Part shown: positions 3,501-51,385 of the stretch, one piece after another
How the letters are laid out: each line of letters starts with the position of its first letter
Numbering within the stretch: the stretch's first letter is position 1
DNA from: Perna viridis
Lineage: Eukaryota
Direction: 5' to 3'
Assembly: GCA_037379345.1 (NCBI GenBank)
Contig: CM074511.1
Span: 51,714,862 to 51,778,861, forward strand
Length of the DNA: 64,000 bases
Made by a program: the position numbers and the translations under genes
Notes under the pieces: generated by a model
Databases searched by the model: none
Told to the model about the DNA's origin: nothing
Seen by the model: only the letters and a program-made list of their open reading frames with translations

Positions 3501-6500
3501 TTTATGATTAATGCTATTTCAGCATCTACATGGTTCCATTCTACAAAAAATACAATTTCATGGTTTGATCAACACACAGAAACAACCTCACATTTTCATC
3601 TTTAATCTACATACCTTCCCCTGATATATATTGGCATACACAATATTGACTTTGTTCTGTACCCTGTTTGCATATCAACTTCTCTGAAAACAAAAACAAC
3701 AGAAAAATAAGTGTAAGAAAATGTACACATTTATATAATGCTTGAAATTGTTGGCTAAAATTCAAACTCTTTTGTACTTCAATTTGCTAAAATATATTGT
3801 AAGCAACCCAAAACAACCTTTTCATTAAAAACAGTGTATTTATAAGTCATTCAACAGATTGAATTTCCTGCACAATATTCAAATATCTTAAGTTTGCATA
3901 ATAAAATCATCTCCATATACGGTAGAACTCAATGTAATGTCAAATGACATGAAAAAAAGAGAACAAATAAAGATTAGCCCCATTCAATAACATATCACCA
4001 TCTGAATCTACAATATCTGCATTCCTCCTAAAACAGAGTCATTCAACCACTAGACCTCCTATTGCAATAGATACTAATAATATTTACAACCCTTCCAAAG
4101 TACTGTTACTTACCTATTAAACCTCCCATCTCCATAGGCATCCATAATATTTAGCACCTGCCCTGTGGAAGCAACATGTCCAGCAACACCTTTGTCCATT
4201 GGAAATCTGAAATTCATAAAAAAAAATACATATATCAAGTCATCCATTATACACAGCTAGAAAAGTTTTAAAAACTTGAAAAGATAAAATATAACAACCA
4301 AAGTTTTTGCAAGAAAAATAAGAGTATTTAGAAACTTACAATGTATGATAAGGGCTGCATATAAGAAACAATATACATAGCAACATTATGAATAAAACAC
4401 CTTATATAATTACCTAATTTCCTTTTGTGGTACATGCTCTTTACCCGTATCAAATATCCGAGCATATAATTCACTAGTCTTAGTATCTACTAGAAACAAA
4501 GATGCTCTGTCAGCATTGACCAATTTCTTGGCATAGTTCTGTAAACATATCATAAATTAATGGTACATTCAAAAGCAAAAAATTCCATGTTCATTTGTAC
4601 TGGTATTCCATAGTTAGGGGTATGATATTTGCCGATTCACGTACATTTTACTTGCAACCTCTAGTTTTGAGTGATATTTATGCGGCTTGTCCTTTGTATG
4701 TATAAGTTCCTTTGTAATGTTTTGTCTTTTGGTGTTCCTCTCTACTGTAAATGTACTAATTTTTGCGGTGTACCAATTTCTGCCATTTTCAGAAAGAAAA
4801 GCATGAAAAATGGTACCTGCAAAATTGATTTGTATTTAGCAACTGTGAAATATAATATTATTTCAATATTTGATGTTTTTGGTTGTATTTTATCTGAAGG
4901 TTTCACTTTTGTCTATATAATTGGTTGTATTTTATCTGAAGGTTTCACTTTTGTCTATATAATTGGTTGTGTTTTATCTGAAGGTTTCACTTTTGTCTAT
5001 ATAATTGGTTGTGTTTTATCTGAAGGTTTCACTTTTGTCTATATAATTGGTTGTGTTTTATCTGAAGGTTTCACTTTTGTCTATATAATTGGTTGTGTTT
5101 TATCTGAAGGTTTCACTTTCGTCTATATAATTGGTTGTGTTTTATCTGAAGGTTTCACTTTTGTCTATATAATTGGTTGTGTTTTGTCTTAAGGTTTGTC
5201 TGTTGTCTATTTGATGTTGTCCAAGTGTTTTTCTGTTGTTCATGTGATGTTTCTGGTTGTATTTTGTTTAAATGTTTGTTGTTTCTTTGATGTTGTCCAA
5301 ATGTTTTTCTGTTGTCCATGTGATGTTTCTGGTTGTATTTTGTTTAAATGTTTGTTGTTTCTTTGATGTCGTCCAAATGTTTTTCTGTTGTCCATGTTAT
5401 GTTTCTGGTTGTATTTTGTTTAAATGTTTGTTGTTTATTTGATGTTTTGGATGTATTTTGTCTAGCAATTTGTCTGTTGTCTATTTGACATTTTTGGTTG
5501 TTTTTCTAATGATTTGTCTGTTGTCAGTTTGATGTTCCTAATTTCTTTCTCTTCTAGAATTTACTCTCATCTGACACTAGTATTTCTACTTCCTTCTTGT
5601 ACTTTCTATTTGCATGAATTAATAAACATATGCAATTTCTTGTATTAAAAATAATCTTGATTCAGTCACTGTGAAAAAGAAGTGCTTTCTTTTACCTTAA
5701 TTTTATTCATTTTTTTAAATAAAAAAAAATATTTAAGGTATTCTTGTTTTTTTAAATCTCTTTGTATAACCATCTCATCATTTAGAAATATACACTCCTG
5801 GCATTAGGAAACATTATCATTTTGTAATTGTAAATTATGTTATGGCTAGCACACAAAAATACATGCATATACACAGATAAAAATATTTTATGTAACAATT
5901 ATCTGATTTTCATCCATATTATTACAGTACATAACATGTACTCGAGTGCTCAATTTCTGCTTTCTAGTGTACCTACCATTATTTTCATGATAACAGTGTC
6001 CATACTAACAATGTCTTGAAATATCGACCTGAAATATCATTAACATCATTTAATTCTATACAGGACTCATTTTATGAGTCTCTGAAGCTATTTCTAAACT
6101 TCAAAGTAAACACAGATAACCCTTACTTTGTATTAATCCAATCATCAATGTAATTTTTTGCAGTTTATTTCTATAGAAATCCTCAACATGCCATATTTTA
6201 ATGTAAGATCTCTGCATCACAGTTTGATTAATGCCTCTATAGAATGCAAGCAGAAAATAAAATAGAAATTGAAATTGAGATTTTCTGTTTAATGGTTTAA
6301 ACAAGCTTAAGATAGAATTGTGTAATACCCATTAATCAGTTTGTTACCTACATAAAACATGGCAACTTTAAACAACTTGGGACTTACTTTGTGACAGCCA
6401 ACAAAAAGTCATTTAACTTCCTCTGTCGCATCATACTGTTATACATCTATAAAAAAATAACACTCATCATCATATGCTATAACCTCTCTCATGTTTAGAA

Positions 6501-9500
6501 ATGAAATCCTATTTTTTTTTAAACTGTATTTTGCATATTGTTGTGAAATATCAATTCACAACAGAACAAATGGTCAGAGTAAGAATGTCTGGTGGTTAAT
6601 ATTTTATCAATTCTATTTATGAGAGAAGTTATGTGAAATTCTGATATAATGCATTAAAAATATGATCATTTTGACTGTATATGAACAAGAATATAACACA
6701 CAGTGTCACATAAAAAATTAAAATTAAACTTAAAAGAAATATTCTTATTTAAAATAAACGTATTTTCTCTCCATATTTTAATACAAATATAGTAATACAC
6801 TTTAATACAAAATGAAGGGAATTTTTTTTATCAGAAGAAAACCACTATAACCGAGATCTTCACGAATTACAGCAAAATTCAACAATGAGCTGTGCCTAAT
6901 AATGATTCAGTGTGATTTCTTTATTTAAAAGCTCGTTATGGTTTGACAAAAATAATTCTCCTGAAATGTGGCAAGGTATTGCTCAGAGATACAGTTACAC
7001 GATACAGAATTAGTGGCAGCAACTGTGTCACTCACAATCTCTGTTTGAATCTATATAGACAACAACCCATTTATTATTGCACTCAAGAAATGACAATAAA
7101 CAGGGTAGGATCATGCAGTGACAACATGACACACTACCTCTATGAAATAGGCAGCAAAGCTTCCCCAGAAAATCAGGTTAGCTGCAATCTAAAGCAAAAT
7201 ACTCATGTTAGTCAAAATAAAACCATAAAGGTGTTAGTTTAACTTAAAGCACTACAAATCAGAACCCAACAAGTAGATACTTGCCAATCTACACTACACA
7301 ATGATTATGTAACTGTTCTAATCACTCATTTATACAAAGAGGTATGGATAAAAAGCTGGAGGAGAAACATTGGTTCAAACAACTGGTGTCAATTTCATAA
7401 AAAGTCGTAAGTGGAAAATTGATCTTAAGTTATGATGTAACAATGTTATTTTCTTTTATGATGTCATTACTACGATCAACTTTACACTTATGACTTTTTG
7501 TGAAATTGATGCCTGAATTGTAAATTTCCTACATGTAAAATGGAAATAAAGGGAAACCTGTCAAAACCAAACCCTAAATAAACCAAAAATCTGTCGAACC
7601 TAGCTCACTTTTATATCCTTTGTGGCAGTTTAAAAGTGGTCTGAATATGAATTAACCAAACACTTGTTCAAGGAGGTAGACCTAGGATAAGGGACATAAC
7701 TCTTGAAATCAGTGATATGTTTGTATCATATTCAATTTCACCAAAGCCTATCAAGTTTTCATTTGAAACAGAATAAAATCAGTCCAAGTTACTTTGATGC
7801 TTACATGAGATTGATGTCAAATGCTGAATACAAATATTCCAATGTTTTGTAAGAGTTGTGTCCCTTACCCTAGGTCTACCTCTTACACAAAACCAATGTA
7901 CAGTTCAAAAGAGATTTGGTTCGGATAGGTTTCACTGAAGTTGTTATCTTTCAGTTTCAGTTTCTTACTTGAAACCTTATATACTTCTATTTCTGATCTG
8001 GTACATGTTTTTCCAATAGCTTTATATTGTAGTAGGAGTTTGCTGCTGTCAATACCATAAATCTGCCATTATCAAATGTCGTCATGATGTTTTAATATCT
8101 GCAGAATGTTATATTGTATAAAATTAATTTCTTGGTTCTAAGCAGATTATGGTATTAAGCACAAACTCTTACAGGTTTAGCACACAGGAGTCATTTCCCA
8201 ATCATATATTGATATGACCCTTCCAGTAATATAATTCTTACAGGTGTAAATTTATTATTTGTTTCCTGTTAATCCTAATAGTGATATAGCATTCCTGATG
8301 AATGTATCAATTTTCACTTATCTTTGCTGTTTTCAATTTCATTTGGTAAGAAACAATAATAGGGAAAATGTAGTACTGGTCAGTCACTTCTTCCAATAAT
8401 TCTCTCATGCAGTGAAACTGGTCTAAACCAAACCCCAAAAAAATCTGAAAACCTGTCTAAACCAGTTTAAAATTATTCTGAACATTCCTTAACTTAAAAC
8501 CTGCCTTAACCAGACCAATTTTTAAGTCAAAAAGTGGTGTGGTATAGACAGGTTTGCAGTGTATCAGGTCTGGTTTCCATTTCATAAGATGTGAAGGAAA
8601 TGCCAATTACACAACAATCTCCAAGATGCTTATGAATATACAATACAAAGCCTTAACCATCAACACTGAGTCGGAATGAACCAAAAAAAAAATCGAACAT
8701 TCACGCAGAGTAACTATTATCCAATGATAGACACCATTGCCATAATTTGATAAGTACCAAAACCATGTAAAATTCAGACACTGACAATGACAGAGGTCAT
8801 AACAGGTGCAGAAAAATACTGGTACATTGTACCAACAATGTTTTGTTCACTCTACATACTACCGGTTCTTACAAAACTATTGCCCTTTCTGCATATACCG
8901 GTAGGTATATATTTTTGAGAAAATCGTACATTCATCAACAATATCAAGAAAGGTAACTCTTGCAAAGTGCCACTAATTAGATTTTGTCTCAGAAATACAA
9001 CAACTGATTGACAAACTTAGACTGGTAGTGAAGTCTGTTTGCGAATTAGAAATAAAGGTAAATTTTGTGTGTGGGTGTTTGACATGATTGATTCACCCAC
9101 TTCCTAATTTTTATGAAGGCTGCTAACTAAAATATACAAATGAAAGATAGAACAACTGAATTTGGAAAATGTAAATTCAAGATACATCCTACATCATTTA
9201 AATGGGAGATAACTCCTGTATCAGTGAGAATGGATTATATATATCAATAGCTGGCATAAACTGTACATCAATGTTTACCTGAACATACTCCACACAAACA
9301 TCAGCCCATACTAACAATGTAGCAGTCACCTAGAACACACAACAATAAAACATGCACACAACATTTGTCATACAAGTATAAAAAAAACAGGGACTTCATG
9401 AATACCATCTTTATCAATTATCATAAACTTTCTTAAGTATTATGTCATTATGTTTAAAATTGGTATTTATTACACACAACCATTAATTCTACTCAATATA

Positions 9501-12500
9501 AAGAAATACAAAATACAACATGTAAAATACAGGGAAGAAAGATCACAACACAGAAACATTGGAACAACAACAGAAGTACTTAGAGTTTTAAGTAAAAAAT
9601 ACAATTATTTCCATGATAATGCATCAATATGTCAAACAGGCTATCAACATAAAAATGATAAGTAAAATTTGATTTTATTAAAAAAAAAAGTTGTATATCA
9701 ATTTGAACTATTATATTTGCTCATTGCATTTAGCCAATTACTTTTGTCAACAATTTTATTAACATGTTATACAGGTAACATTTTGTTGGTTTTCACAATT
9801 TAATAAAGTCACCAATAACATGTCATGTGCTGTCATGACCCCACTGATAGAGGAAGTTGATATCCAATAACTTAAATGTATGTCTGGTCTATATAGTCAC
9901 TTACCAAATATGAAATTGATCCATTCATTGGGAATTGAGATAATTTTGGTGAAATTAGAGCAGACAGAATAACCAAAAGATGGACTGATGAACAGAGACA
10001 CAGACAAACTGATATCAAAACGCATTGGGTGGGGGGTATAATCTAGTTGGTTCTTATTTCAGGCACTAGCTGCAAGGAGAGCTAAGTTTCTTATACAATT
10101 TGAAGACCTTCCAAATAAAATTTAGTATAACTATCTGAAATGGACACATCAGAAAATTCCACAAAAAATTGATTTTTTTTAATTGACTTCTGTCCTACCT
10201 CTTCATCTTCCTGAGTAAAAGGTTCAGCACTGAACTGTCTGTACAACTCTACCACACCTATAATAACAAAGTCAAGGTCATAGGTAATAACAGTGCACTC
10301 TGATATACAGACAAGGCTTAGAACTGTGGGAAAATATGAGTCTGTGCCGAGCATCTTCAATGATCGAGCCAAATGCATATATCAAAGTTTTGGTTAATGT
10401 GTTCACATTTTTAATGGAGATCCCCAATTTACAATCTAGCAGTATTCTTTAAATAAATATACAAGTAAAGGCACTTTAAGTTAATCATTAGGCAATAGCC
10501 TATTGTTATAAATCACTAAATCCATGAGATAATTTAAATTTCAACTTTCTAATACAGAAATTTTCAGTATTTCTTTATATAAGTATAGTTATTTCTTCTT
10601 TAAAATGTTATGTCATTTGTAAAACTTCACTATAGATTATGTCACTATTTCAGAGGATGTGACAGACAGAAAGACAAATATAGAGGATGAAATCCTTTGT
10701 GCAGGCATATAGCTAAGATTTTTAAGGAAGTACATTAGGAATGCTTTTCCAGTGAAGCTTAGACCCTCAATATAATTCAGAACAAAGGATAAGTAGCAAA
10801 CCACCATTTCCTTGTGTTTGATATCTTTATCAACTTCATAAACAGGGTACATACCAAGAACCCCTGAGTCTTCCTGTAAAATAGGAACAGCTAACACAGT
10901 CTGGACATGGTCCATCTTAATACCCAAACCTGCTGGGAACCTCATGTCCTAAAACACACAAAGTTCAATGACATTTGAGATAGAAAGAAACATAATGAAA
11001 GTATTCTCACTTTCTTGGGTCTATTTGCTTACTGGTTTCATCTGGTGTATATGGTTTAAACCTATTTTGATTATTTAGAATTCAAATTTACTCTTCAGAA
11101 TTCCATGTACTAGTAGTTTTAGAGATGTCATTGATCAAATAATTGAAAAAGTAGAAAACCAATACAAACATGAGAGTATTTAAGTGGTTCTGTCAAAATA
11201 TTGTATTAAAAGACCCAAAGACCAATGTCCTTTCCATTTCATTTGACTTCAAGGGCCAAAATATTTCATTGAATTGTGTTTTGTAACATTTCACAAACAT
11301 TTTATCCATGTAAGCGTCTTCCATGGAAACGAAGTCTTATCCTTAAATTGCACTCAGTTTTATTATTATGAGGGAAAATACTTTTAGCTCTAAAATACAG
11401 TTCATTTCAATAAATTTCAAATCTGTTTCTGTTACAGATAAATGATACTTCTATCCATTGCTGATGATTCATCAGATGAAAACATAATTGTTATATGGAC
11501 TTTAACTTTTCCCCTTATAATGATTTGACTTCAAAGGATTTTAAGTAGTCCTACAAATTCAAATGCCAGTTAAGATGAAATAAAACACAAATGGAGTTGT
11601 CTGAAATGTATAATTCTGAGACATTATTGGATATTTTTTGTAGTTTGATATGTCTTCATCATAAATGCTAAATTGTTCTTATATTTTGTTTTCATACAAT
11701 TCTATACAAAGTTAAATTGGTATTTTTAAGTTGTTTAAAGCAAATTTAGGTGCATACCAGGTAGTTACTACAAGTATTACTATGTAAAAGAAGATAAGTT
11801 TGTTAAAATAAAAATGAAATTCTGTTCAGCAGTTTCAGTGGATTTGTGATGACAAAAAAGAGGGCTGAAGGACTGACACTTCAATAACATTAAACCCTCT
11901 GTAAATTTATAATAAAAATTGTGATATTTTGTTCCTACTGGAAATTTACACTCAATGAATAAACTGTAAATTATTGTATAAGACGGGTGTAAAATAAACT
12001 ACAACTTTAACTTAAACAAAACCAAGTAATTGAAATTGGACAGGAAGTAATAAAGAAACCAAGAACACTTTACAGTTACCATGTGATATGCATCACATTT
12101 TTAAACAATGTCATATTTTTGTCAATATGAGCAGAAAACTTCATGTGACTTACCCCTTGCACATGATTGGTTCTAATTGTATCTTTCGTCTTGGCAACAT
12201 AAGAGGGCAGAGAAGTTCCTGTTTCTATGTTACCAATGTAGGAACCAGTAGATGATTTGTGTTTATCATGTGACCTCGAACCCCTGAAACACAAACAGAT
12301 GAAAGTAATATGACAATTCTAAACCAATAAAAATAAAGTATTATTAGAGGACACTACACCTTGATTTATTTAGCATTTGAAGAATTCAGTTTTCCCCAAA
12401 TCAACAGTTTATCATCCAGCCCCTACTGATTGTTCTGTTCACGCAATACTGGCCATGATCACCCTGACCACATAACACTATATATAGCCCTAACTGACTG

Positions 12501-15500
12501 TCCTGTCTACACAACACTAGTCCTGACTGTCCTGCCTACACAACACTAGTCCTGACTGTCCTGCCTACACAACACAAGCCCTAACTGACTGTCCTGTCTA
12601 AACAACACAAGCCCTAACTGACTGTCCTGTCTACACAACACAAGCCCTAACTGACTGTCCTGTCTACACAACACTAGTCCTGACTGTCCTGCCTACACAA
12701 CACAAGCCCTAACTGACTGTCCTGTCTACACAACACAAGCCCTAACTGACTGTCCTGTCTACACAACACAAGCCCTAACTGACTGTCCTATCTACACAAC
12801 ACAAGCCCTAACTGACTGTCCTGTCTACACAACACAAGCCCTAACTGACTGTCCTATCTACACAACACAAGCCCTAACTGACTGTCCTGTCTACACAACA
12901 CTAGTCCTGACTGTCCTGCTACACAACACAAGCCTTAACTGACTGTCCTGTCTACACAACACAAGCCCTAACTGGCTGTCCTTCCTACACAACACTAGTC
13001 CTGACTGTCATGCCCACACAACACAAGCCCTAACTGACTGTCCTGTCTACACAACACTAGTCCTGACTGTCCTGTCTACACAACACAAGCCCTAACTGGC
13101 TGTCCTGCCCAAATAAAACTAGCCCTAACTGGCTGTCCTGCCCACACAACACAAGCCACAACTGGCTGCCCTGCCTACACAACACAAGCCCTAACTGGCT
13201 GTCCTTCCTACACAACACTAGCCCTCACTGGCTGTCCTGCCCACACAACACAAGCCGTAACTTGCTGTCCTGCCTACACAACACTTTCATGTCCTATCAA
13301 CAGTATATGGCTCTATCTTGTTTCCTGCTGTTATTTGCAGCAAACAATGAAAGTGTTCTTCGAACATGCAATTTAACTTCCACAAAGATATTCTAGCATT
13401 AAACCTAATGTCAAAAATATATAAATAGGAGATGTGGTATGTCATCCTTCAGAAGCCAAGCAACGAACAATTATACTTCTACAGGGCACCACATGGTTTT
13501 CAATGATGGGCAAAGCCATACCATAAAGCAAGCTGTGAAATTCCTCAAAATGAGTGAAGAAAATTATTCATAAAAAATGAAAATTAACCTAATCTACAGA
13601 AAAAACATAACATGAATAACAATAGACATTAAAAAAATGACAACCACTGGACTACAAGTTCCTGGGAAAAGTAGACAGCATAAAAAAATGTAAAAGTTCT
13701 ACTGTGGCAATATGATCATCATGATCTAAAAAAAAAAACTTAAAAAAAACAAAAAAGTAAGCCAAAGATATAATGAGTAATGGACAGCTAAAGAGAATAT
13801 CAACAGCTAAGGGCACAAATAGATAATCTCTATATTCTCCCTACTCACTGTATTAAATACAAGAGTATAAAAGGAAGTAACAATGAATCTGTCATTGTAA
13901 AGGACAAAGCAGTGCATGTTTATGTTAAAGGTTACCCTCTATAATTAACAACTTCTTCTGATTGTTAATATGGCAGGTGTTTTCTTCTGCTGTACCTCAG
14001 TGCAAAGTGGCAAAATTATCACATAGTTGTGAGAACAAACTGTGCTAATGTTTTTACATATTAGTCAGTCTGAAGAGGGAGAGATTCATTAATCAATAAA
14101 CAGCAGCAATTTATATCACCAATGCTGCATCATGTACCTCAATCAAAAAATTACATAATTTTTTTATGTAACAAAATATTTAAACATAGAAACATGTCCC
14201 CTGCTTTGGCAAAGATCAAGTGCAAAAATCCCATAACTTCTACACTACTTGTAGAATCAAAATGGCAGTGCAAATGATTAATTACATATGATGACTAAGA
14301 ATCCTACAAAATTTGAACAAAATCTGTCAAGTGCTTTCCAAGGAGTTGCATCTACAATGTACTACTCTAGTGTAACATGTATAAATTCAACAACAAAGTT
14401 CCATAACTCATGTTAAAATTTCTTTTATCAAAATGATATGGCAATATTATGACTTACAATCCTACAAAATTTGAACAAAATCTGTTGTGTCACCACAACA
14501 ATAACATACATAAATGTTTGTTATTCTACAGATTCAAGGAAATTGATATTATTTCATTCTACAGATTCAATGGAAATTGATATTACTATGACCCCTTTCA
14601 TTGTGCAGTGGAGGACAACTAAAAAAGGAGATATTCATAAACAAATATACATGCATATTAATATCTATTCCAAGCACCACTTGCATTTCAATTACTGAAT
14701 AAATATGACATGACCACTTCAGTCTGCATCAACTTATTTGCTTCTACCATTCAGTAAATGTAAACATCTTTAAGCCTTTTTTGAGATACTGCTGCAATCC
14801 AAAAGAATCTACCAAAAGTTAACATAAATCTGTACAATATTAACCTCTTTGTCATTTCCTTATTAATGTTGTATTTATTTAAGAACTTTTTTCAGGATTC
14901 TTTGAACAAAGGTCTTACAGACTAATGTTGGGACAGGAAAGTTGAGCTTCTGTATATGATTTCACAAAAAGTGTACAATGTGTTGTAGGATATGCCATCA
15001 CAATGCTTTTTTCAATTTCTGTTATGATGTCATTACTAACAATTAATATTACACCTTTTTTTGTGAATCTAGAATTACTGTAAACAAAGCTCACAAAAAG
15101 AAACTCTGTGATAACATAAATGCACACATACCCAGTGTACCCAGTGTAAAATAGGCACTGAAGCTTTCTTTGAAGATTGGGTAAAATCATGTAAGAACTT
15201 GGTACACATAGACACCACTGAACTTATAAAAATGTATGTTATTCTACAGATTCAAGAAAACAAGGGGACATCAATGCATGGCTTGATATTTTTTACTGTT
15301 TAATATCAATTTCTCACCTGCTGGATGATATTGAAGAAACTTTGTGATGATACAACTGAAATGATAGGAAATAAATACTTAATTAAATTTCAGGTATGTA
15401 ATGAACCCCTCAAATATAGTAAAAACTTATCATTACGTTTCAAAGTACATGTAGTAAACACATATAGCTTTGATAAAAAAGATCCTAGGTAACAGGTGAT

Positions 15501-42500: not shown

Positions 42501-45500
42501 CACCAAGTGAGCTATGCACATAATTTGTCTAGTTATATTAGAATATGTCTGTTCCGATTCATTCCATAAAAAAAACAGTTTCTAATTATAAAACTCTAAT
42601 AAATGAAACAGGCAAATGATAGTAAGAGGATATCGAAGTAACCCGAATTAATTTTTCTTGCAAATATATAAAGAATGTGACCACTTAATACTCGGTAGAT
42701 ATATATATATATCAGTGGGAAACGCATCTAAAAAACATTATGCTTTACTGGATATGAAAATATTGAATGGCCATTTCTCTATTTAGTACATATGAATGCA
42801 TTTTGATTTATATCTTATTTGTTCACTATTAAATATCTATAAGTATAAAACATCATGATCCTAGATATGTTAGTAATTTATTTTCCAAAGAATCTTAGCA
42901 ACATTTGGATACATGCATATTTGAAACTTCATGTAACTTTGATCAATGATAAAGGACAGCATAAACATTTATGGAAATATATAATTAAATTCCATGTTCT
43001 TCCCACATAAAATACCTTTCTGGAATTTAGTCATGACTAGAGGCGGATACAGATACTTTCAAACCTTCGGACACAAGTTCGGTGCGCCCCGATCCTGTAT
43101 TCGCATTTGGTGATTTGCAATTCGCAAATTTCAATATAAAAGATGATGTTTTAAATCCTCTAGAAAAGCATAAGAATGTGAAATATCAATACACAACGTA
43201 CGGATTTGGCGCAAAAATGAAATTGTAACTTATTAAACTAAACAACGTTGTTAAGGGCTTCATCGGCGTAATAGCAAGAAAAGGTAAATACCCGAAAATA
43301 AAATCACAATAAAAAGTATGGATATAATAGAACAATCGAGAGCATGCAAGCAATTTTCAAACCATTAGTCAAACTCAACAACAGGTTAATAAATTTATTT
43401 TCAACGAATTACCTTTCAACTTTCGTTTCTTGTGATGACCTGAAATAATTTATACTCATTATGCTTTGACTGTATTAGCAGTGAAAATGGATAAATTACA
43501 TCAAAACCTTGATAAACGTGACATTTACCCTAACTTGTCCTTTATTTAATTTTCGAACGGACTACAATTAGGTTCAACACCAACTGTCCCGGAATTTTAT
43601 TGATTTGAATGATTAGGGCCTAGACACACAGACAGACAATTCTTATAACAACTATATTTAGAAAGACATAACAAGAATTATAAGCAATCATAACTGAGAT
43701 ACGAGCAATTCACTAAAACAGTGTTGCTAATGGCTTCGGGTCACATGTTATTGGCAAATTCAAGTTCGTCAGACATTATGAAATAATTCTGAACTTGACT
43801 GTCCTTACCTGATATTTATTTCGAATCCTTTTAAAGGATATTCTTCATTAAATGTTGCCATCATATCAATAATTTTACCACCTCAAAGAAACGGGTTTTC
43901 TTGATCGCCTACTGAACACACCGCTGACGCGTGTATGTGCCAGTTTTCTTGTTACCTTATAAGGAATACAAAGACGTGTCAAACCCTTACTGCATCATTA
44001 TCTCAGATATTTGTTATCCTTATTTAAAAAAAATGACAATAGCCATTGTACCATGTGGAGATTGTTTCTTTGCAGATTTAAAGTATGTATCGTTACATGT
44101 GTGTTGACATTGATACCAAGGCTGGCAGATCATAAAACATCACTTCCATTTATTAATTTCATGTAAGAAATGAGATTTAGTTAATTATATATGAAACAAT
44201 TTTATTTTATCTGACGTATTTTTCAGGAACTAAGAATATTTTGCACTTTTTCGTGCAACAAATCTTCTGTAGATTGTCTGTGAATTATTCATTTTTACCA
44301 CAGACCAAGATGACACTGTCATGACTCCTTGATAGACTTTTTTATTTCATACAAATGCGGTTTTTTAATCAAGAAGGCGGAGAAAGATATTGTCCATTTA
44401 ACACATCCATAGACCACTCCGTACATAATTTGCAAAGCCAATCCAAAATCATTTTTATAACGAATCGCAATACTTTGTCTGAATTAATTGTAATAGTCTG
44501 GGATAGTAATGTAATCGAAATTTATGCCTTTGTAAAAAAGGCTGGTGTTAAAGCGTTTTCTGTTTCACCTGAAAGCTTCAGTTGTCAATTTTCCTATATT
44601 GTGTCGCTTTGGAATTTGCACATTATTTATATTTAGTTTCGGTATATCATTGCATTTATGTAAAGCGAAAAAGATATATGTTCGGTTTATTTCAAGTCAA
44701 ATCAGAAATATATATAGTAAAATATGTGTTTACTTATTTGCCAACATAGAAAATTTTACTGCTTTGGTTATCTTTTTTGAAAGACAGTACATGTATGCAG
44801 TTCATTCGCGATATATAATATGAAAACCTTGGTGCATAAGTAGCCAAATCTGTAAATTATGCCAAATTGGGGAGGGGGTATACTTGCTTTCATTATATTT
44901 TCCTTACAGGAGAGTTTGGTCACATGCTTCAGCAACAAAAATATATATTCCCATGAAAGCCTAGTGTATCAGAAAACTTTTGACGGCATATTTAGTCTGT
45001 TGAAGCGTGTGGTCTATATGTCCGGATAAAAAAAAAAAAAACACTTGCAAAGTTCTAAATTTCGTATAAGATTAATGAAATTTGCATAGAAAAGATACGT
45101 TGAGGCACTTTGACACATAACAACTCATGAATCTTCTTTAGTTTGCCGATGTGTTAAACCTCACACTGAGCCAAAAAGCTGATATGAAAATGTCTACAGG
45201 TCCATTTCCACACATATATCAATATACACATAAACACTTATAGTAGATATATTTGTTGTCTTAGTAACACGAAGCGTAAAACTTTTATTTTAACCATGTT
45301 AAACCAGTAATTATTTAATGTTTGACAGACAATTACGACCAGAAATATATGAAAGTACACGTATCTAGAATTCAATGATTGTGAAGTATGTGTTTAAGTT
45401 TATTGATTTTCGGTTTCCTTTTGCGTCTTTTTGTTTTAGTTTCCAATTTTCAATTTACGATATTTTCTGTAGGTGTTCAAAAATCAGAAAATAATTTGAT

Positions 45501-46456
45501 TCGGTTAAAGTGAAAAGAAAGGTACAAAGTCGATTTCGCCAATATTCATATTCACGAATAACACTGTTTACAAGTGTTACTTGACAAAGGGACTTATTCA
45601 CAACGATTTTTTTCGCGATCTTTGCTTGGTCTTGAAATAAGCGAAAAAAAATTTCTTAAGTCTTTTTTTCACATCTGATCGAATAAAGATGATTTAAATA
45701 AGTTGTCATGACTCTGCAATAAGGTGAACTTTTTAAATCTCGGCCTTACATGACGTGAATTTGCTGTTGCGTCATCATGGAATTATCAGTAATTAGACTT
45801 TCTTATGCTTGGCACTTTAAGATATTTTACAGATGGAATATAACACCAAGTAAAATATTGTTTTGTATTGGTCAATGTTTAAATTTTAACAGTCAATATA
45901 AACAAGTAATTAGAAATGACCGAAAAATATTGATTTTGATATTTTAACTACTTGTTTAATTAGCCATGATAAAACTTTAAAAGGTTTTCCTAATAAGAAT
46001 TTGCTATGTGATTTTTAACAGGCTGGACATAAAATACTTAATGGTTTAATCGTGCAATGAAATATATTACATGGCGATATTAAGTTTTGTATGATAAGTT
46101 CCAAGCTTAGGCATTAATGTCACTTTGATTGTATATTATTGTAACTGTAAGGACGGTTTGATATTTACCACTTGGTATTTTTATGACAATTTCATGCCAT
46201 AGGGTTGGTAGTTTGGCATACAATTATGTTGGACGTGAAACTGTGATAGATCGTCAACATGATAATAAAATAATCAATTTTAAAGAGAAAATAGAATGGA
46301 AAGGAGGTACGAATATGACTTACCTGTTATCATCATCTCCTCTGTGGGTGTATGCATTGGTCTGTCCCTCCCTCGACATGGAGATTTTCCCGGCGATACC
46401 CCTGGTAATGGGGGTAGCCGGCGTTGGTTCATCTGCCGTATAGGACTAGACATCAT
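530..46456 (-). CDS. PDE10A: PDE10A-like dual-GAF cAMP/cGMP phosphodiesterase; multi-exon gene, 3' (catalytic) part lies outside the window
   Basis: Hand-assembled GT-AG exons with matching phases give ...[21 protein letters not shown]...DMRFPAGLG...GVVELYR...[45 protein letters not shown]...[50 protein letters not shown]...[60 protein letters not shown], recognisable as PDE10A GAF-A/GAF-B. Confidence 0.93.
1310..1399 (-). CDS. PDE10A: PDE10A exon at the start of the catalytic region ([30 protein letters not shown])
   Basis: ttttag acceptor, gtaagt donor; 90 nt phase 2-2, open frame. Confidence 0.87.
1811..1950 (-). CDS. PDE10A: PDE10A exon ([30 protein letters not shown]...)
   Basis: GAF-to-catalytic linker 'ALEVLSYH'; 140 nt phase 0-2. 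Confidence 0.94.
2024..2235. mobile_element. MITE-like fragment (tactgta...tagta ends)
   Basis: Imperfect terminal and subterminal inverted repeats; similar-looking fragments at about 4742-4850 and 27685-27880. Confidence 0.45.
2481..2595 (-). CDS. PDE10A: PDE10A GAF-B exon ([38 protein letters not shown])
   Basis: NK...F...DE GAF motif; 115 nt phase 2-0. Confidence 0.95.
2677..3227. mobile_element. Non-autonomous DNA transposon with TTAA target duplication (Kolobok/piggyBac-type MITE)
   Basis: ttaa-GGTAGATCATACC ... GGTATGATCTACA-ttaa: 13-bp TIR with one mismatch, TTAA on both sides. Confidence 0.75.
3615..3683 (-). CDS. PDE10A: PDE10A GAF-B exon ([23 protein letters not shown])
   Basis: GAF 'TGYxTxxILCMPI' motif; 69 nt phase 2-2. 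Confidence 0.95.
4114..4206 (-). CDS. PDE10A: PDE10A GAF-B exon ([31 protein letters not shown])
   Basis: Classic GAF 'GIAGxVAxTGxxLNIxDAYxDxRFN' motif; 93 nt phase 2-2. Confidence 0.95.
4414..4538 (-). CDS. PDE10A: PDE10A GAF-B exon ([18 protein letters not shown]...KEIR)
   Basis: GAF-B motif; 125 nt phase 0-2. Confidence 0.95.
4879..5197. repeat. 42-bp minisatellite, about 7.5 copies
   Basis: Unit ttggttgtgttttatctgaaggtttcacttttgtctatataa; explains the repetitive 173-aa ORF. Confidence 0.95.
5211..5450. repeat. 76-bp tandem repeat, about 3 copies
   Basis: Unit starts at 5211, 5287 and 5363. Confidence 0.85.
5977..6028 (-). CDS. PDE10A: PDE10A exon ([17 protein letters not shown])
   Basis: 52 nt phase 2-0; tttcag acceptor, gtaggt donor. 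Confidence 0.93.
6388..6446 (-). CDS. PDE10A: PDE10A exon ([20 protein letters not shown])
   Basis: LNDFLL inter-GAF helix; 59 nt phase 0-2; canonical splice sites. Confidence 0.93.
7112..7117 (-). promoter_or_regulatory. Rbfox motif UGCAUG 21-26 nt downstream of exon A
   Basis: catgca on + reads TGCATG on -. Confidence 0.55.
7138..7188 (-). CDS. PDE10A: PDE10A mutually exclusive exon A ([17 protein letters not shown])
   Basis: 51 nt, phase 0-0, ttttgctttag acceptor, GAG|gtagtg donor; W at codon 8; same structural slot as 9279-9329. Confidence 0.8.
7383..7515. mobile_element. Palindromic MITE, about 130 bp
   Basis: ggtgtcaatttcataaaaagtcgtaagtg ... cacttatgactttttgtgaaattgatgcc inverted arms. 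Confidence 0.7.
7549..7937. mobile_element. CAGT...ACTG-type MITE interrupted by a nested element; related uninterrupted copy at about 8410-8562
   Basis: gaaacctgtcaaaaccaa ... ttggttcggataggtttcactg ends; same family ends at 8410 (cagtgaaactggtctaaacc). Confidence 0.6.
7672..7883. mobile_element. MITE with ~32-bp TIRs nested in the previous element
   Basis: gaggtagacctaggataagggacataactctt / aagagttgtgtcccttaccctaggtctacctc. Confidence 0.8.
9279..9329 (-). CDS. PDE10A: PDE10A mutually exclusive exon B ([17 protein letters not shown])
   Basis: 51 nt, phase 0-0, ttctag acceptor, CAG|gtaaac donor; W at codon 8 as in vertebrate PDE10A 'VATANLAWASVAIHQVQ'. Confidence 0.82.
9351..9356 (-). promoter_or_regulatory. 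Rbfox motif UGCAUG about 22-27 nt upstream of exon B
   Basis: catgca on + reads TGCATG on -, in the branch-point/polypyrimidine zone. Confidence 0.55.
10199..10257 (-). CDS. PDE10A: PDE10A GAF-A exon ([20 protein letters not shown])
   Basis: GAF motif; tatag acceptor, gtagga donor; 59 nt phase 1-0. Confidence 0.92.
10855..10948 (-). CDS. PDE10A: PDE10A GAF-A exon ([31 protein letters not shown])
   Basis: DxRFPxG motif; ttttag acceptor, gtatgt donor; 94 nt phase 0-1. Confidence 0.92.
12154..12283 (-). CDS. PDE10A: PDE10A GAF-A exon (GSRSHDK...[25 protein letters not shown])
   Basis: GAF 'YVAKT' motif; tttcag acceptor, gtaagt donor; 130 nt phase 2-0. Confidence 0.9.
12486..13285. repeat. Minisatellite of interspersed 33-bp and 29-bp units, about 25 copies
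   Basis: acacaacacaagccctaactgactgtcctgtct (33) and acacaacactagtcctgactgtcctgcct (29). Confidence 0.95.
13420..13690. mobile_element. Degenerate bivalve SINE-like fragment
   Basis: Motifs 'agatgtggtatg', 'caaagccataccata', 'gacaaccactg' recalled from an abundant mussel SINE; not database-verified. Confidence 0.45.
15318..15355 (-). CDS. PDE10A: PDE10A GAF-A exon ([13 protein letters not shown])
   Basis: catttcag acceptor, CAG|gtgaga donor; 38 nt, supplies the required phase 0 to 2 change. Confidence 0.78.
15906..15955 (-). CDS. PDE10A: PDE10A GAF-A exon ([17 protein letters not shown])
   Basis: Resembles PDE10A 'ATKADGFALY'; tttcag acceptor, gtaaa donor; 50 nt phase 1-0. Confidence 0.88.
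18218..18329 (-). CDS. PDE10A: PDE10A exon ([37 protein letters not shown])
   Basis: ttag acceptor, gtaagt donor, 112 nt phase 0-1; entry helix of GAF-A. Confidence 0.87.
20137..20160 (-). CDS. PDE10A: Candidate optional 24-nt PDE10A microexon (KHSPSNLQ)
   Basis: gtgttttcag acceptor, CAG|gtaaca donor; frame-preserving inside a phase-0 intron. Confidence 0.5.
21125..21378. mobile_element. Dispersed repeat fragment (retroelement-end-like)
   Basis: CpG-containing 'ggtgcaccggtagggtaagcatcctctgc...cacccgccgagttgctc' within CpG-poor DNA; resembles a common mussel repeat (from memory). Confidence 0.45.
26993..27525. repeat. Minisatellite of ~26-29-bp units, about 19 copies
   Basis: Core aataca(a/c)catgagctatat followed by a variable C-rich spacer. 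Confidence 0.95.
27996..28033 (-). CDS. PDE10A: PDE10A exon ([13 protein letters not shown])
   Basis: Poly-T ctag acceptor, AAG|gtaatt donor; 38 nt, supplies the required phase 1 to 0 change. Confidence 0.82.
28593..29374. mobile_element. Foldback-like non-autonomous DNA element with many internal GCATATGC palindromes
   Basis: TIR tatggtgta...tacaccata, long imperfect subterminal inverted arms, about a dozen gcatatg(c) motifs. Confidence 0.7.
29752..30085 (-). ncRNA. Unidentified multi-hairpin structured element in a PDE10A intron (candidate ncRNA or structured non-coding exon)
   Basis: GC-richer island with a ~115-nt hairpin (29858-29973) and several smaller stems whose mismatches are G-U pairs only on the - strand; ACA follows the last hairpin. 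Confidence 0.4.
30892..31041. mobile_element. Near-perfect 150-bp palindrome (MITE-like)
   Basis: taagaattgg..atgataaaaattttgtctat..gaaaaataacaaattttcc / ggaaaatttgttatttttc..atagacaaaatttttatcatccaattctta. Confidence 0.8.
31120..31373 (+). mobile_element. 'GGCGGATCCAGG'-TIR MITE; inverted copy at 52146-52434
   Basis: TIRs agggcggatccagg / cctgaatccgcccta; interior matches the reverse complement of 52146-52434. Confidence 0.8.
31472..31627 (-). CDS. PDE10A: PDE10A exon ([38 protein letters not shown]...)
   Basis: Resembles the PDE10A pre-GAF helix region; tttcag acceptor, gtgag donor; 156 nt, phase 1-1. Confidence 0.9.
31678..32011. mobile_element. CACT-ended MITE with CGTGCGTT subterminal repeats; partial second copy at 35825-35953
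   Basis: Ends ..tccttgaaacgtt / aacgtctcaaggagtg; right end nearly duplicated at 35825-35953. Confidence 0.75.
33115..33255. repeat. 48-bp degenerate tandem repeat, about 2.7 copies
   Basis: Recurring aattatgac..cagtgctg..cc..aca.ttgtgg.accatttat. Confidence 0.75.
36718..36876. mobile_element. Palindromic MITE, about 160 bp
   Basis: tcaaaatctgtatcacatgctgtatcaaccc / gggttgatacagcatgcgatacagattttga. Confidence 0.8.
38606..38671 (-). CDS. PDE10A: PDE10A N-terminal exon ([22 protein letters not shown])
   Basis: attttacag acceptor, CAG|gtgagt donor, 66 nt, phase 1-1, open frame. Confidence 0.72.
41605..41925. repeat. Old degenerate ~30-bp minisatellite
   Basis: Recurring atttcagtc(c)tcatggtgg(a)gaa motif, about 10 times. 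Confidence 0.7.
42301..42534 (+). mobile_element. Short Helentron-associated (HINE-like) fragment
   Basis: ttatacccctg start, gtccgtcc motif, caggtgta sub-TIR and ctagtt end. Confidence 0.45.
43413..43439 (-). CDS. PDE10A: PDE10A 27-nt microexon (HHKKRKLK)
   Basis: ttatttcag acceptor, AAG|gtaatt donor, phase 1-1, open frame. Confidence 0.6.
46324..46456 (-). CDS. PDE10A: PDE10A putative first coding exon ([45 protein letters not shown])
   Basis: ATG preceded by an in-frame TGA; GC-rich; strong donor CAG|gtaagt; ends in phase 1, matching the downstream exons. Confidence 0.7.
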
Positions 46457-46835
46457 TATAGGGTCATCAGCAGCTCATATGTGAATATCCAGCGAACCTT
46501 CCCATCATAGAGTAAACAACTGAAGCTGAAGATTCGTATAAACTGATACAGAAGATTGAAGTTTACTTTTCCGTGCAATCTTTTTAAACACACTAACCAA
46601 TACAGCAAAACATTTAATGTATTTAAATCCTTTTCAACTGACTGTGCCAATTTCCATATTTATATAAAGATTAACAGTGGTAAAATGTTCGCTTCGATTT
46701 ATTAAACGCTTATTTATGCTGCTGACAGTTCCTCGACAAGATAGGTAAATGGAGGAAAAAACTTCTTTCTCTCTCACAAATCAATATAAACCACAACACT
46801 TAAGTTCCACCTGTTTATTTAACGGAATTGTTCTG

Positions 46836-46843
46836 TGACGTCA
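46836..46843. promoter_or_regulatory. Palindromic CRE (TGACGTCA) about 380 bp upstream of the putative PDE10A ATG
   Basis: Exact consensus match; function is inferred. Confidence 0.35.
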
Positions 46844-47778
46844 TGAAGAGGTGAAAGATCAGGTAGACGAAGATGCTGATAATCAGAGACAACAGAAGAA
46901 TCTCCATTGATCAGATAATATACATGTACATGTAAGGTTTGTCGTGCGTACACCCGATTGGTGCTTACTATTACAATGCTGTTAACTTTTTACGTCACAT
47001 GTAGTATCGGAATGTTTATAAGATATTGTTAATTTGTTGAGAAGTTTAACATAAAATTGTTGTAAAATAAAAACAAAAAGTACAATGAATTTGTCTATTT
47101 TCTATAGAAAGGCGAAGAATAGAAGATACCCTATTATTTCTTTCGAATGGGTAGTCATGGAGAAATATTATACTCAGGGCATGGATAGTAGTAGTATTTG
47201 TACCTCTGTACAAAAAAGAAAATAAAAACAATGGATTCCTAATATGATTAAAAAAACGTGCTATTACGGTAATACGTGGTTGTATGAAGCCGTGAGAAGT
47301 ACTTCATCGTCGGCGACAGGCTTTTGAACTTTCGGAAACTGATAAGAAAATAATCGGTATATATGTGCTGTCAACTTGATAATTGTCACAATTAGTTTCA
47401 AAGAAGAATTCATTAAAGACATTTCGGACGATCTTTGATGATGCATTTTTAAAAATGTTTTTTTCAGTAATATTGGAAGTTTATCATGACAAATCATAAA
47501 CATTATATAATTTCTAAACAAACTGAGATAGCATTATGCTGAATTCTGTAATTTATTCTTTTATACACGACGTAATAAGAATTTGTAACCAGATTTTTCA
47601 GTCGAAAATTGCAAGTATGGAAAGCCATACACAATACATTCTTATTTTCGACAATTTATGACATTAGAAACAAGGATCCGTTCCTGGCTGGAAAGGACAA
47701 TTGAAATATACGATAGTAACATATGTTTCCCTCATTTCAATGTAAATTAGTTTTCAAGAACTTGCATAAGCTGTGTTA

Positions 47779-47966
47779 CTGATGAGCTTTAGGTGACGTG
47801 TCGCCTTCTATATCTTGGGTTCTAAAATTTTCACTCCAAAAGATATGAAGCGTAGGCATTAATAACTCTTGGTATATATATGCTTTTTTTTTATTAAGAC
47901 CTTCCTATGTACTTGTTCTATCAATGCCACTGATGAGAGGTTATTCCTGGAAACACGTGTACAGCA
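47779..47966 (+). other. Two degenerate hammerhead-ribozyme-like cores (Penelope/retrozyme-type remnant)
   Basis: CTGATGAG at 47779 and 47930; the second is followed by stem agg-ttatt-cct and GAAAC-ACGT-GTA. Confidence 0.4.
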
Positions 47967-48050
47967 TACCAAAATTTGCAAAATAAATGAGTGTAATTGT
48001 TTTTGATATAATGAACTCAATTTGGTTCATTTGTCATACCGGTAACCGGC

Positions 48051-49273
48051 TTTTTAGTTCACCTGGCCATTGGTCATGTGAGCTATTGCCATCACTTGGC
48101 GTCCGTCGTGATCGTCGTTAACAATTCTTCAAAAATCTCTGAAACTACAAAATGAAAGATGAAACTTAAGATTGTTCCCTAGAGTCTCCTCAGAAACTGC
48201 TCTACAGAATTCAATGAAAGTTGGTATTTTTGTTTTAAAGGGCATCCTTAACAAAATGTCCGTTTGGATTTTTGATCTGTTAAAAAACATGGCCGCTGTT
48301 ACTAAAAGTAAAACAAAGGGGTCGAAATACAGTTTTTAACAAATAACTCAAAAACATGAATTTTGCCAAATTCCTAGTGAGAGTAATATTGTTAACCATC
48401 AGAAGACGGACCTTTGCCAAAATTTTCAAAATGATTTGTTCCCTATTGTAGGATTTTTTTGTTGTTTTAATGTGTACAACTCTCTGAAACCAATTGCAAC
48501 TGCAACAAAATTTAATGAAAGTTGGCATGCATGATTTTTTAGGGTTTCCTCCATAAACTGATCATTTAAAATTTTTCAAACAACATGGCCGTCGTTACTA
48601 AAATATAACTTGGAGTCAAAATGCTTTTTTTTTGCTTTTTCCCCCTAAACTATAGAAAAATAATGAGAATGAAAGCTATCCATAAGATAAACATAAGTTG
48701 ACAGGTAGTATTGAATTTATTTCTTAGGCGGCCATTTTCAAAATGGCTGCCTATTTACGACCATTTTCACCAGTTGCTCAGATTCCATTCTTAGGAAACT
48801 AGGTACTTTAAGTTGAAAAGTGATGACGAAAGATTGTTCTGTGCAGCCACTTTTCTGCAATTTTTTATACTTGCTTTGATTTCAACAATAATTGGTTTAT
48901 ATAGTAAACATGGTCTCCTGATATGAATGGTGATGATGAACATTTTGGATAGCCGTGGTTTAACCTCATTTCATGTTCTTTTTTTTCAGCAAATCTATAC
49001 CAAGATATTGCCTGCTCAGAACTGGTGGAATAATAAGGCATGGGGACCCCTGCGAAAATTTCTTCCAGAGGTTCTAAAAACACGTTGAAGGCATTTCCAA
49101 CATTTTTCAGTGCCTTAGGTACTTTTTTGAACTTACAGCATTCTTCAATATATGCTTTTTTTCAGTAATTTTTTTTGTCAAACATGGTAACAAAGCGTGA
49201 TACCTTTACATACTTAATCAATACGGTATGGTTTGTCAGGTGAGCGATTCTGGCTCTTCGAGAGCCTCTTGTT
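48051..49273 (+). mobile_element. Non-autonomous Helentron-type element (HINE-like)
   Basis: T-run then agttcacctg; gtccgtcgt microsatellite; 3' caggtgagc sub-TIR followed by hairpin ggctcttcgagagcc and tcttgtt. Confidence 0.75.
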
Positions 49274-50939: not shown

Positions 50940-51385
50940 AGGTACAGATGTGCGGCCAGTATCGGTCTACTTTTATGATTGGTAATATACGAAAAGGGTA
51001 GGTATTTTAGTTGCAGTATATGTTATTGGGGTCAACATTTACAAATAGGCTATATGGTTACCCATGGTTACCCATGGTTATTGACTTCAATTAAATCATG
51101 ATCCTTAAAATTATCAAAGTAAATAAAGATTAACACTTGACTGATAAGCAGGAAGGGTTCCAGTTAGCTCTGACATGTTAATGATGTCTTTAAATACAAT
51201 GTCATTTATTCTGATTAGAATCCTGCTGTGATATGTAGACACTGATAAGTGCCATGCATATATACATGTTATATATGAATGGATTACATATATGCATTGC
51301 ATATATTTGAATGGGTGTCCGTTTTTCATTGTCAGAATATATGAATGGGGTGGGTAAAAATTTTCGGGGCCGCACACCCGTGCCG
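50940..51385. mobile_element. MITE-like element
   Basis: ggtacagatgtgcggcc / ggccgcacacccgtgcc imperfect inverted repeats, next to a (TG)n and G run. Confidence 0.5.

What the first reader, a model, noticed from the sequence alone, without database searches (positions are those of the whole stretch)
7112..9356. Rbfox UGCAUG motifs in switch geometry around the two alternative exons
Seen: on the transcribed strand UGCAUG lies about 22-27 nt upstream of exon B (9351-9356) and 21-26 nt downstream of exon A (7112-7117); a third copy is at 8406-8411. Known: Rbfox/Fox-1 proteins generally repress exons from upstream sites and activate from downstream sites, mainly in neurons and muscle. Inference: Rbfox-expressing tissue would skip B and use A, with B the default elsewhere. 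This independently supports both exons being real.
Basis: partly seen in the sequence, partly recalled or inferred. Interest (0 to 1): 0.78.

Follow-up and report, generated by a model that had tools for sequence, protein, structure and literature searches.

The report
Conserved Rbfox-type motif beside alternative PDE10 exon
Two interchangeable 51-base exons of a mussel-like bivalve's PDE10-type phosphodiesterase gene are flanked by UGCAUG motifs exactly as reported; the copy just after the rarely used exon recurs in a pearl oyster and a true oyster, so it is probably a real splicing enhancer of a well-known kind, but tissue-specific use was not tested.

Summary
Observation confirmed. On the minus strand, UGCAUG lies at 9356-9351 (21 nt before exon B, 9329-9279), at 7117-7112 (20 nt after exon A, 7188-7138) and at 8411-8406.

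The gene is a PDE10-type GAF-GAF phosphodiesterase. Both exons encode the same 17 residues after GAF-A. RefSeq models of oysters, scallops and a nemertean carry A-only and B-only isoforms. Mytilus models show B only, B+A or neither.

- **Motif after A:** it recurs at +22 in Mytilus coruscus, +18 in Pinctada and +69/+157 in Crassostrea virginica. In Argopecten it appears only at +626. Over five species that intron holds 9 copies against 1.8 expected (P about 1e-4).
- **Motif before B:** kept only in Mytilus, at the same -21 position; absent in the other three.
- **Third copy:** it sits at the edge of a dispersed repeat and is not conserved.
- **RNA:** contigs from three studies join through B and skip A. 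Exon A was not covered in any of the four runs.

Interpretation partly supported. An Rbfox-type enhancer of a weak exon A is likely. Repression of B is a mussel-family feature at best. Tissue specificity, Rbfox binding and an Rbfox gene in this genome remain untested. This is a new member of a known kind. Other first-stage notes flag Rbfox motifs elsewhere in this genome.

The parts
10199..10258 (-). Constitutive exon encoding the end of GAF-A (ends ...EDEE); its donor joins to exon B in RNA contigs
   Evidence: RNA-contig piece 10197-10258 and joint 9327->10197 in X1, X3, X4 and X6; sequence and GT donor; tblastn with a Mytilus protein
9351..9356 (-). UGCAUG 21 nt upstream of exon B, embedded in GUGUGCAUG, next to a possible branch site and polypyrimidine tract
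   Evidence: Conserved at the same -21 position in Mytilus coruscus inside a 32-nt conserved block. Absent in Pinctada, Crassostrea and Argopecten
9279..9329 (-). Exon B (51 nt, 17 aa, 'W-A-D' type), the form seen in RNA contigs
   Evidence: Joints 10197->9327 and 9279->6446 in X1, X3 and X6; orthologous B-type exon in all bivalve proteins examined
8406..8411 (-). Third UGCAUG; lies at the edge of a dispersed repeat and is probably irrelevant
   Evidence: At least 68 genomic matches begin at or within a few bases of the motif; RNA contigs break at 8410; no TGCATG in the Mytilus B-to-A intron
7207..7214 (-). UGACUAAC, the likely branch site of exon A; conserved with Mytilus
   Evidence: the conserved block reaches 29 nt upstream of A
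7138..7188 (-). Exon A (51 nt, 17 aa, 'W-G' ancestral-like type) with a weak donor (GUAGUG); skipped in all laid RNA contigs
   Evidence: A-type exon found in Mytilus, Pinctada (not in the one deposited protein model examined, P0154), Crassostrea and Argopecten loci. A-only isoforms annotated in oysters and scallops. Zero depth in bin 7001-7200
7121..7129 (-). UCAUGUUGU element 9-17 nt downstream of A's donor; UGUUGU lies within 35 nt of the donor in all five species
7112..7117 (-). UGCAUG 20 nt downstream of exon A's donor: candidate Rbfox-type intronic splicing enhancer
   Evidence: Recurs at +22 (Mytilus), +18 (Pinctada) and +69/+157 (Crassostrea). It is one of only four hexamers shared by window, Pinctada and Crassostrea in that 100-nt flank
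7100..7143 (-). Predicted hairpin pairing A's 5' splice site (GGUAG) with CUACC, and UCAUGU with GCAUGA
   Evidence: Fold energy -16.7 kcal/mol, z -3.3, 0 of 200 shuffles as stable. Similar but weaker hairpins in Mytilus, Pinctada and Argopecten (z about -1.2); none in Crassostrea
6387..6446 (-). Next constitutive exon (consensus GUAAGU donor), joined directly to exon B in RNA contigs
   Evidence: Joint 6446->9279; sequence

Best explanation
The gene is a PDE10-type phosphodiesterase with two GAF domains, on the minus strand. Two adjacent homologous 51-nt exons encode alternative versions of the 17 residues that start the helix between GAF-A and GAF-B. Exon B has the better donor and is the default. 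Exon A has a donor that is weak in every species examined and needs help to be used. The UGCAUG 20 nt downstream of A is most likely an intronic splicing enhancer of the Rbfox type. Where an Rbfox protein is expressed, it would bind there and promote recognition of A's 5' splice site. In the mussel family a second UGCAUG, 21 nt upstream of B and close to its branch site and polypyrimidine tract, probably adds repression of B. Together these would move the choice from B towards A (or towards B+A). Shown here: the motifs and their positions, the homology and reality of the exons, B as the assembled form, and recurrence of the A-downstream motif across three bivalve lineages. Inferred: Rbfox as the binding protein, the direction of each effect, and neuron or muscle specificity.
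For: Coordinates and splice sites are confirmed. Orthologue isoforms with A only, B only, both or neither show the pair is truly alternative. RNA contigs from three studies splice 10199->B->6446 and skip A. In Mytilus coruscus both motifs sit at the same offsets (-21 and +22). Conserved blocks there reach 32 nt upstream of B and 37 nt downstream of A, against mostly 3-19 nt at constitutive exons. In Pinctada an A-type exon absent from the deposited protein model has UGCAUG at +18 and +198. In Crassostrea virginica the motif is at +69, +157 and +497. Over five species the A-to-next intron holds 9 copies against 1.84 expected (Poisson 1.3e-4); the other two introns are at expectation. In an unbiased hexamer comparison, TGCATG is one of only four hexamers shared by window, Pinctada and Crassostrea in the 100 nt after A; the other three flanks share none. 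A's donor lacks the +4 A in all five species, whereas B's has GUAA. Published rule: Rbfox enhances from the downstream intron, and fly and worm homologues bind the same motif (PMC5538552). In C. elegans, RBFOX represses the upstream exon of the egl-15 exclusive pair from its upstream intron, and promotes a unc-32 exon from the downstream intron (PMC4165533).
Against: No RNA contig covers exon A in the four runs laid, and their tissues are unknown. The scallop has no copy within 600 nt of A. The motif upstream of B is missing outside mussels. Window and Mytilus are related, so their agreement is not independent. The Mytilus models listed show B+A rather than A-only, which does not fit simple B repression. 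Both flanks are UG-rich, which raises the chance rate. In mussels the A-downstream motif is predicted to pair with an upstream CAUG inside a hairpin, so structure could explain its conservation there. No Rbfox gene was confirmed in this genome.
Confidence: 0.55

Rival explanations
1. The motifs are chance products of UG-rich splice-site flanks. Their agreement with Mytilus only reflects the general constraint on intron ends next to alternative exons, with no dedicated UGCAUG reader.
For: The window-wide count is at expectation. Local-composition shuffles produce the hexamer in 4-12% of trials per flank. The scallop lacks a nearby copy and three species lack the B-upstream copy.
Against: The motif lies within 70 nt of A's donor in window, Pinctada and Crassostrea; its joint chance within 100 nt is about 1e-4, calculated by hand from the per-locus densities. 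The A-to-next intron is enriched about fivefold over five species (P 1.3e-4), and the neighbouring introns are not. The rest of those flanks is unalignable, yet this hexamer is shared.
Confidence: 0.13
2. The conserved element is an RNA hairpin that hides exon A's weak 5' splice site. UGCAUG is kept in mussels because it pairs with the upstream UCAUGU. Exon choice would then depend on hairpin stability or a helicase rather than on Rbfox.
For: The window hairpin has energy -16.7 kcal/mol and z -3.3. It pairs GGUAG with CUACC and UCAUGU with GCAUGA. Mytilus keeps both stems. Pinctada has a 9-bp stem of different sequence over its own 5' splice site.
Against: Z-scores outside the window are only about -1.2, and Crassostrea shows no hairpin. 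In Pinctada the motif lies in the loop, and in Crassostrea it is 69 nt away, so pairing cannot explain its recurrence. The two ideas are compatible: a hairpin could present or mask an Rbfox site. No covariation test was possible with five highly diverged sequences.
Confidence: 0.12
3. Another RNA-binding protein is the main regulator. Candidates are a CELF/Bruno-like protein on the UGUUGU element after A, or a SUP-12/RBM24-like protein on the GUGUG before B. UGCAUG would be secondary.
For: UGUUGU lies 9-34 nt after A's donor in all five species, including the scallop that lacks a nearby UGCAUG. Per-species chance is 0.03-0.08. GUGUG overlaps the B-upstream motif in both mussels. CELF and RBFOX sites often co-occur and act antagonistically (PMC5538552).
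Against: UGUUGU was found after the fact among 4096 hexamers and is common in these introns (1 per 500-1300 nt). Its reader is unknown. It does not exclude Rbfox action, since combinatorial control is the norm.
Confidence: 0.15

Closest known systems
C. elegans egl-15 exons 5B/5A (RBFOX family ASD-1/FOX-1 with SUP-12)
   Same: A pair of alternative exons. RBFOX binds the intron upstream of the upstream exon and represses it in muscle, so the downstream exon is used (PMC4165533). This matches the proposed role of the UGCAUG before exon B.
   Different: In egl-15 the intron between the two exons is 14 nt, so double inclusion is sterically impossible. Here it is 2090 nt (808 nt in Mytilus), and B+A isoforms are annotated. 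From my own recollection, not checked here, the worm composite site has UGCAUG followed by GUGUGC; here GUGUG precedes and overlaps the motif. The B-upstream site is found only in mussels.
C. elegans unc-32 exons 7a/7b and the general vertebrate Rbfox RNA map
   Same: RBFOX binding in the downstream intron promotes inclusion of the adjacent exon (PMC4165533; PMC5538552). This matches the recurring UGCAUG after exon A.
   Different: No binding or functional data exist for bivalves. The regulated exon here lies in a PDE10-type gene, and I found no report of such a target.
Vertebrate SCN-alpha exons 5a/5b with conserved TGCATG elements
   Same: Duplicated mutually exclusive exons with several TGCATG copies conserved in the flanking introns, interpreted as Rbfox sites (bioRxiv 10.1101/2025.08.16.670673).
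   Different: A different gene family and phylum. That study also found conserved pairing elements. Here only a weakly supported local hairpin was seen.

Membership tests
Rbfox-regulated alternative exon | (U)GCAUG in the flanking intron within about 300 nt of the regulated exon | tested here: met
   Copies at -21 from B and +20 from A
Rbfox-regulated alternative exon | Motif conserved in orthologous introns | tested here: met
   Met for the A-downstream site: Mytilus +22, Pinctada +18, Crassostrea +69/+157; 9 copies against 1.84 expected over five species. Argopecten is the exception (+626). The B-upstream site is conserved only in Mytilus.
Rbfox-regulated alternative exon | An Rbfox homologue is encoded and expressed in the organism | tested here: inconclusive
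   The Fox-1_C (PF12414) search of the window's own genome was blank even at E 10, and a short degenerate pattern was blank. Both are weak tests on an intron-split gene. An RBFOX3-like transcript is reported from octopus (PMC5736919).
Rbfox-regulated alternative exon | Exon usage follows Rbfox expression (neurons, muscle), with the direction depending on site position | not testable with these tools
   The four runs are contigs of unknown tissue, and all show B and no A.
Rbfox-regulated alternative exon | Direct binding of the Rbfox RRM to the site | not testable with these tools
   Needs EMSA or CLIP
Mutually exclusive exon pair | Adjacent homologous exons of equal length and phase | tested here: met
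   Both are 51 nt and phase 0-0, and both align to the same 17 residues of PDE10-type proteins
Mutually exclusive exon pair | Exactly one of the two exons appears in mature mRNA | tested here: inconclusive
   A-only and B-only isoforms are annotated in Ostrea, Saccostrea cucullata, Crassostrea virginica, Pecten, Argopecten and Tubulanus. B+A appears in Mytilus, Saccostrea echinata, Dreissena and Tubulanus. Neither exon appears in some Mytilus and Ostrea models. In this species only B was seen.
Mutually exclusive exon pair | A built-in mechanism that forbids double inclusion (steric, frame/NMD) | tested here: not met
   51+51 nt stays in frame. The intervening intron is 2090 nt here and 501-1572 nt in the other species, far above steric limits.
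egl-15-type RBFOX/SUP-12 composite site | UGCAUG immediately followed by GUGUGC (arrangement recalled from memory, not checked in a paper here) | tested here: not met
   The order is reversed and overlapping (GUGUGCAUG) in the window and in Mytilus

The most novel reading that the evidence does not exclude
An ancient swap of the helix that couples GAF-A to GAF-B in PDE10, possibly dating to the common ancestor of molluscs and even nemerteans. It would be driven by an Rbfox site held in or beside a hairpin that masks the weak 5' splice site of the ancestral-type exon. Neurons or muscle would then make a PDE10 with different cyclic-nucleotide allostery from other tissues.
Probability: 0.2. Interest if true: 0.6.

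Novelty: new member of a known kind. Interest (0 to 1): 0.4.

Why it matters
Rbfox control of alternative exons is textbook in vertebrates, flies and worms, but has hardly been examined in molluscs. A UGCAUG site that recurs beside the same exon in mussels, a pearl oyster and a true oyster suggests the rule also operates in bivalves. It also gives a concrete, testable target. The exon pair changes the helix that links the two regulatory GAF domains of a PDE10-type enzyme. A tissue-specific swap there could alter how cyclic nucleotides tune the enzyme. The two natural variants would be a useful handle on GAF-to-catalytic-domain signalling. The mechanism itself is not new.

Tried and rejected
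- **Third UGCAUG (8411-8406):** rejected as part of the system. It lies at the end of a dispersed repeat with at least 68 genomic copies and has no counterpart in Mytilus.
- **Rbfox gene in this genome:** the Pfam Fox-1_C search was blank at E 0.01 and at E 10, and one short degenerate pattern was blank. The point stays open.
- **Pfam on single exon translations:** gave only a sub-threshold GAF_3 hit. Gene identity came instead from orthologous proteins.
- **Orthologous loci that could not be fetched:** Mizuhopecten and Dreissena have gene ranges above 100 kb. Ostrea, Saccostrea, Mytilus edulis, Tubulanus and the partial Dreissena protein are not on record as the longest product.
- **Search for A-containing transcripts:** returned only cluster representatives already seen.
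- **Literature search for Rbfox in bivalves:** found nothing usable.
- **egl-15-type composite site:** considered and rejected, because the order of the two elements differs.
- **Spliced protein model:** I did not build a joined model of the window's gene. Exons were searched singly by reference, and database orthologues served as full-length queries.

Full report
**What is there**

On the minus strand, TGCATG occurs at 9356-9351, 8411-8406 and 7117-7112. Exon B is 9329-9279 and exon A is 7188-7138. Each is 51 nt and phase 0-0, with an AG acceptor and a GT donor. The window contains no N.

**Is it more than chance?**

- Window-wide the hexamer is at expectation: 36 found against 35.5 expected.
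- At the minus-strand density of 1 per 2667 nt, a copy within 30 nt of both named flanks has P about 1e-4.
- Both flanks are UG-rich.
- Sequence of this window alone is therefore suggestive, not decisive.

**The gene**

Single-exon translations resemble GAF-domain phosphodiesterases. I searched the 41-residue exon 4538-4416 by reference. This returned full-length orthologues. The closest named ones are annotated 'probable 3',5'-cyclic phosphodiesterase pde-5' in RefSeq and 'PDE10' in Mytilus coruscus. Their catalytic domain matches human PDE10A chains more strongly than the equivalent PDE5 catalytic-domain chains (about 295 against 236-241 bits).

Pfam places the alternative 17 residues about 28 residues before GAF-B. 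They lie directly after the conserved acidic end of GAF-A, at the start of the connecting segment between the two GAF domains. tblastn with a Mytilus protein maps about 18 exons of the gene between window positions 46456 and 1309 on the minus strand, and the gene continues beyond the left end. I did not build a joined spliced model. Exons were searched singly and database orthologues were used as full-length queries.

**Are both exons real and alternative?**

| Isoform type | Species with an annotated model |
|---|---|
| A only and B only | Ostrea edulis, Saccostrea cucullata, Crassostrea virginica, Pecten maximus, Argopecten irradians, Tubulanus polymorphus (a nemertean) |
| B+A in tandem | Mytilus edulis, M. 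trossulus, Saccostrea echinata, Dreissena polymorpha, Tubulanus |
| Neither exon | Mytilus, Ostrea |

- The A type keeps the W-G signature seen in insects, cnidarians and amphioxus. The B type (W-A-D) is seen in bivalves and several gastropods. The pair is therefore old, and A looks like the ancestral version.
- Nothing built in forbids double inclusion. 51+51 nt stays in frame, and the intervening intron is 2090 nt here and 501-1572 nt elsewhere.

**RNA in this species**

Seventeen probable RNA runs hold parts of the gene. I laid four runs from four studies on 4401-10400.

- In X1, X3 and X6 one long contig joins 10199 to B, and B directly to 6446, then continues to 6026/5977 and 4538. Exon A is skipped.
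- No run has any depth in the bin that contains A.
- In X4 the main contig (depth 32.8) stops two bases past the 6446 junction, and the B-containing contig has depth only 5.4. I could not explain this.
- All runs are contigs, which drop rare variants, and their tissues are not given. B as the default is supported. Absence of A is not shown.

**Conservation, the decisive comparison**

I obtained four orthologous loci: Mytilus coruscus (L001), Pinctada imbricata (L002), Crassostrea virginica (L003) and Argopecten irradians (L004).

| Species | UGCAUG upstream of B | UGCAUG downstream of A |
|---|---|---|
| Window | -21 | +20 |
| Mytilus coruscus | -21 | +22, +977 |
| Pinctada imbricata | none within 200 nt | +18, +198 |
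| Crassostrea virginica | none within 150 nt | +69, +157, +497 |
| Argopecten irradians | none within 150 nt | +626 only |

- In Mytilus the remainder of the introns is unalignable with the window.
- Local alignment between window and Mytilus runs 32 nt upstream of B, and 29 nt upstream and 37 nt downstream of A. At constitutive exons it mostly runs 3-19 nt.
- The Pinctada A-type exon is absent from the one deposited protein model I examined (P0154), but it has good splice sites.
- Summed over five species, the intron after A has 9 copies against 1.84 expected (Poisson 1.3e-4). The intron before B has 2 against 1.58, and the B-to-A intron has 1 against 2.16.
- Without assuming any motif, the only hexamers shared by window, Pinctada and Crassostrea in the 100 nt after A are TGCATG, ATGTTG, TGTTGT and TATATA. 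The other three flanks share none.
- The third window copy lies at the end of a dispersed repeat with at least 68 copies.

**Supporting anatomy**

- A's donor is weak in every species (GUAG or GUAU, no +4 A, no +5 G). B's donor has GUAA, and the next constitutive exon has consensus GUAAGU.
- A has a consensus-like branch site, UGACUAAC.
- A weak donor with a nearby downstream UGCAUG is the classic setting for Rbfox-dependent activation (PMC5538552).
- The B-upstream copy lies just 5' of a possible branch site and the polypyrimidine tract, where a bound protein could hinder 3' splice-site recognition. This placement argument is my inference.

**Other things seen at the same place**

- UGUUGU lies 9-34 nt after A's donor in all five species. 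It may be a site for a UG-binding protein.
- The window's exon end and first 38 intron bases fold into a hairpin (-16.7 kcal/mol, z -3.3). It pairs the 5' splice site with CUACC, and UCAUGU with GCAUGA. Mytilus keeps both stems, and Pinctada has a different 9-bp stem over its own splice site.
- Z-scores outside the window are only about -1.2, and Crassostrea has no such fold. Structure could explain the mussel conservation but not the recurrence of the motif in Pinctada and Crassostrea.

**Comparison with known systems**

- The B-upstream site parallels C. elegans egl-15, where RBFOX with SUP-12 represses the upstream exon of an exclusive pair from its upstream intron.
- The A-downstream site parallels unc-32 and the general Rbfox map (PMC4165533; PMC5538552).
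- Conserved TGCATG beside duplicated exclusive exons is also reported for vertebrate sodium-channel genes (bioRxiv 10.1101/2025.08.16.670673).
- Differences here: there is no steric block, B+A forms are annotated, the GUGUG element is on the other side of the motif, and the repressor half is restricted to mussels.

**What remains open**

- An Rbfox gene was not confirmed in this genome.
- Tissue specificity and binding could not be tested.
- Other first-stage notes flag Rbfox-type motifs beside alternative exons elsewhere in this genome. One follow-up found conserved GCATG after a RasGAP microexon. These are leads, not support.

**Verdict**

The repressor half is supported only within the mussel family. 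The tissue prediction is untested. This is a new member of a known kind, of moderate interest.

Noticed in passing
window 7600-8000: The intron between exons B and A holds a repeat whose RNA-contig depth reaches 45,000-61,000 in all four runs. Many contigs break at 7670, 7745 and 7884. This looks like an abundantly transcribed dispersed element (SINE- or MITE-like).
   Followed up: no
window 7121-7129 and the matching places in L001-L004: UGUUGU lies 9-34 nt after exon A's donor in all five bivalves, including the scallop that lacks a nearby UGCAUG. It may be a second conserved splicing element with an unknown reader.
   Followed up: partly
window 7100-7143: A predicted hairpin hides exon A's 5' splice site (z -3.3). 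Pinctada has a 9-bp stem of different sequence over its own splice site, which hints at compensatory change. It is too weakly supported to call.
   Followed up: partly
window 6446-6448 in run X4: The main transcript contig of X4 (depth 32.8) ends two bases past the exon junction, while the B-containing contig has depth 5.4. Neither exon A nor the upstream exon is covered at high depth. There may be a branch to an unseen upstream exon or start site.
   Followed up: no
window 4671-5500: Two tandem-repeat arrays lie in the intron: a unit giving repeated in-frame ORF text on the plus strand (4671-5192) and a roughly 76-nt unit (5155-5500).
   Followed up: no
window 12500-13250: A GC-richer stretch (0.40 against about 0.31, strong negative GC skew) with a short tandem unit that reads as a repeated peptide on the minus strand.
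   Followed up: no
L001 51993-52561, 35009-35289, 71589-72129: In Mytilus coruscus, fragments of three coding exons of this gene are repeated in tandem inside the adjacent introns (for example eight copies with a 71-nt period).
   Followed up: no
Proteins P0359, P0361, P0363 (Tubulanus polymorphus): The nemertean orthologue has three versions of this 17-residue exon (A-type, B-type and a third with six extra residues). The alternative cluster may therefore predate molluscs or have arisen twice.
   Followed up: no
L001 69783-69917 and 71507-71620: Two homologous copies of a catalytic-domain exon lie in the Mytilus locus, consistent with the scan's note of a second exclusive pair just left of this window.
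   Followed up: no
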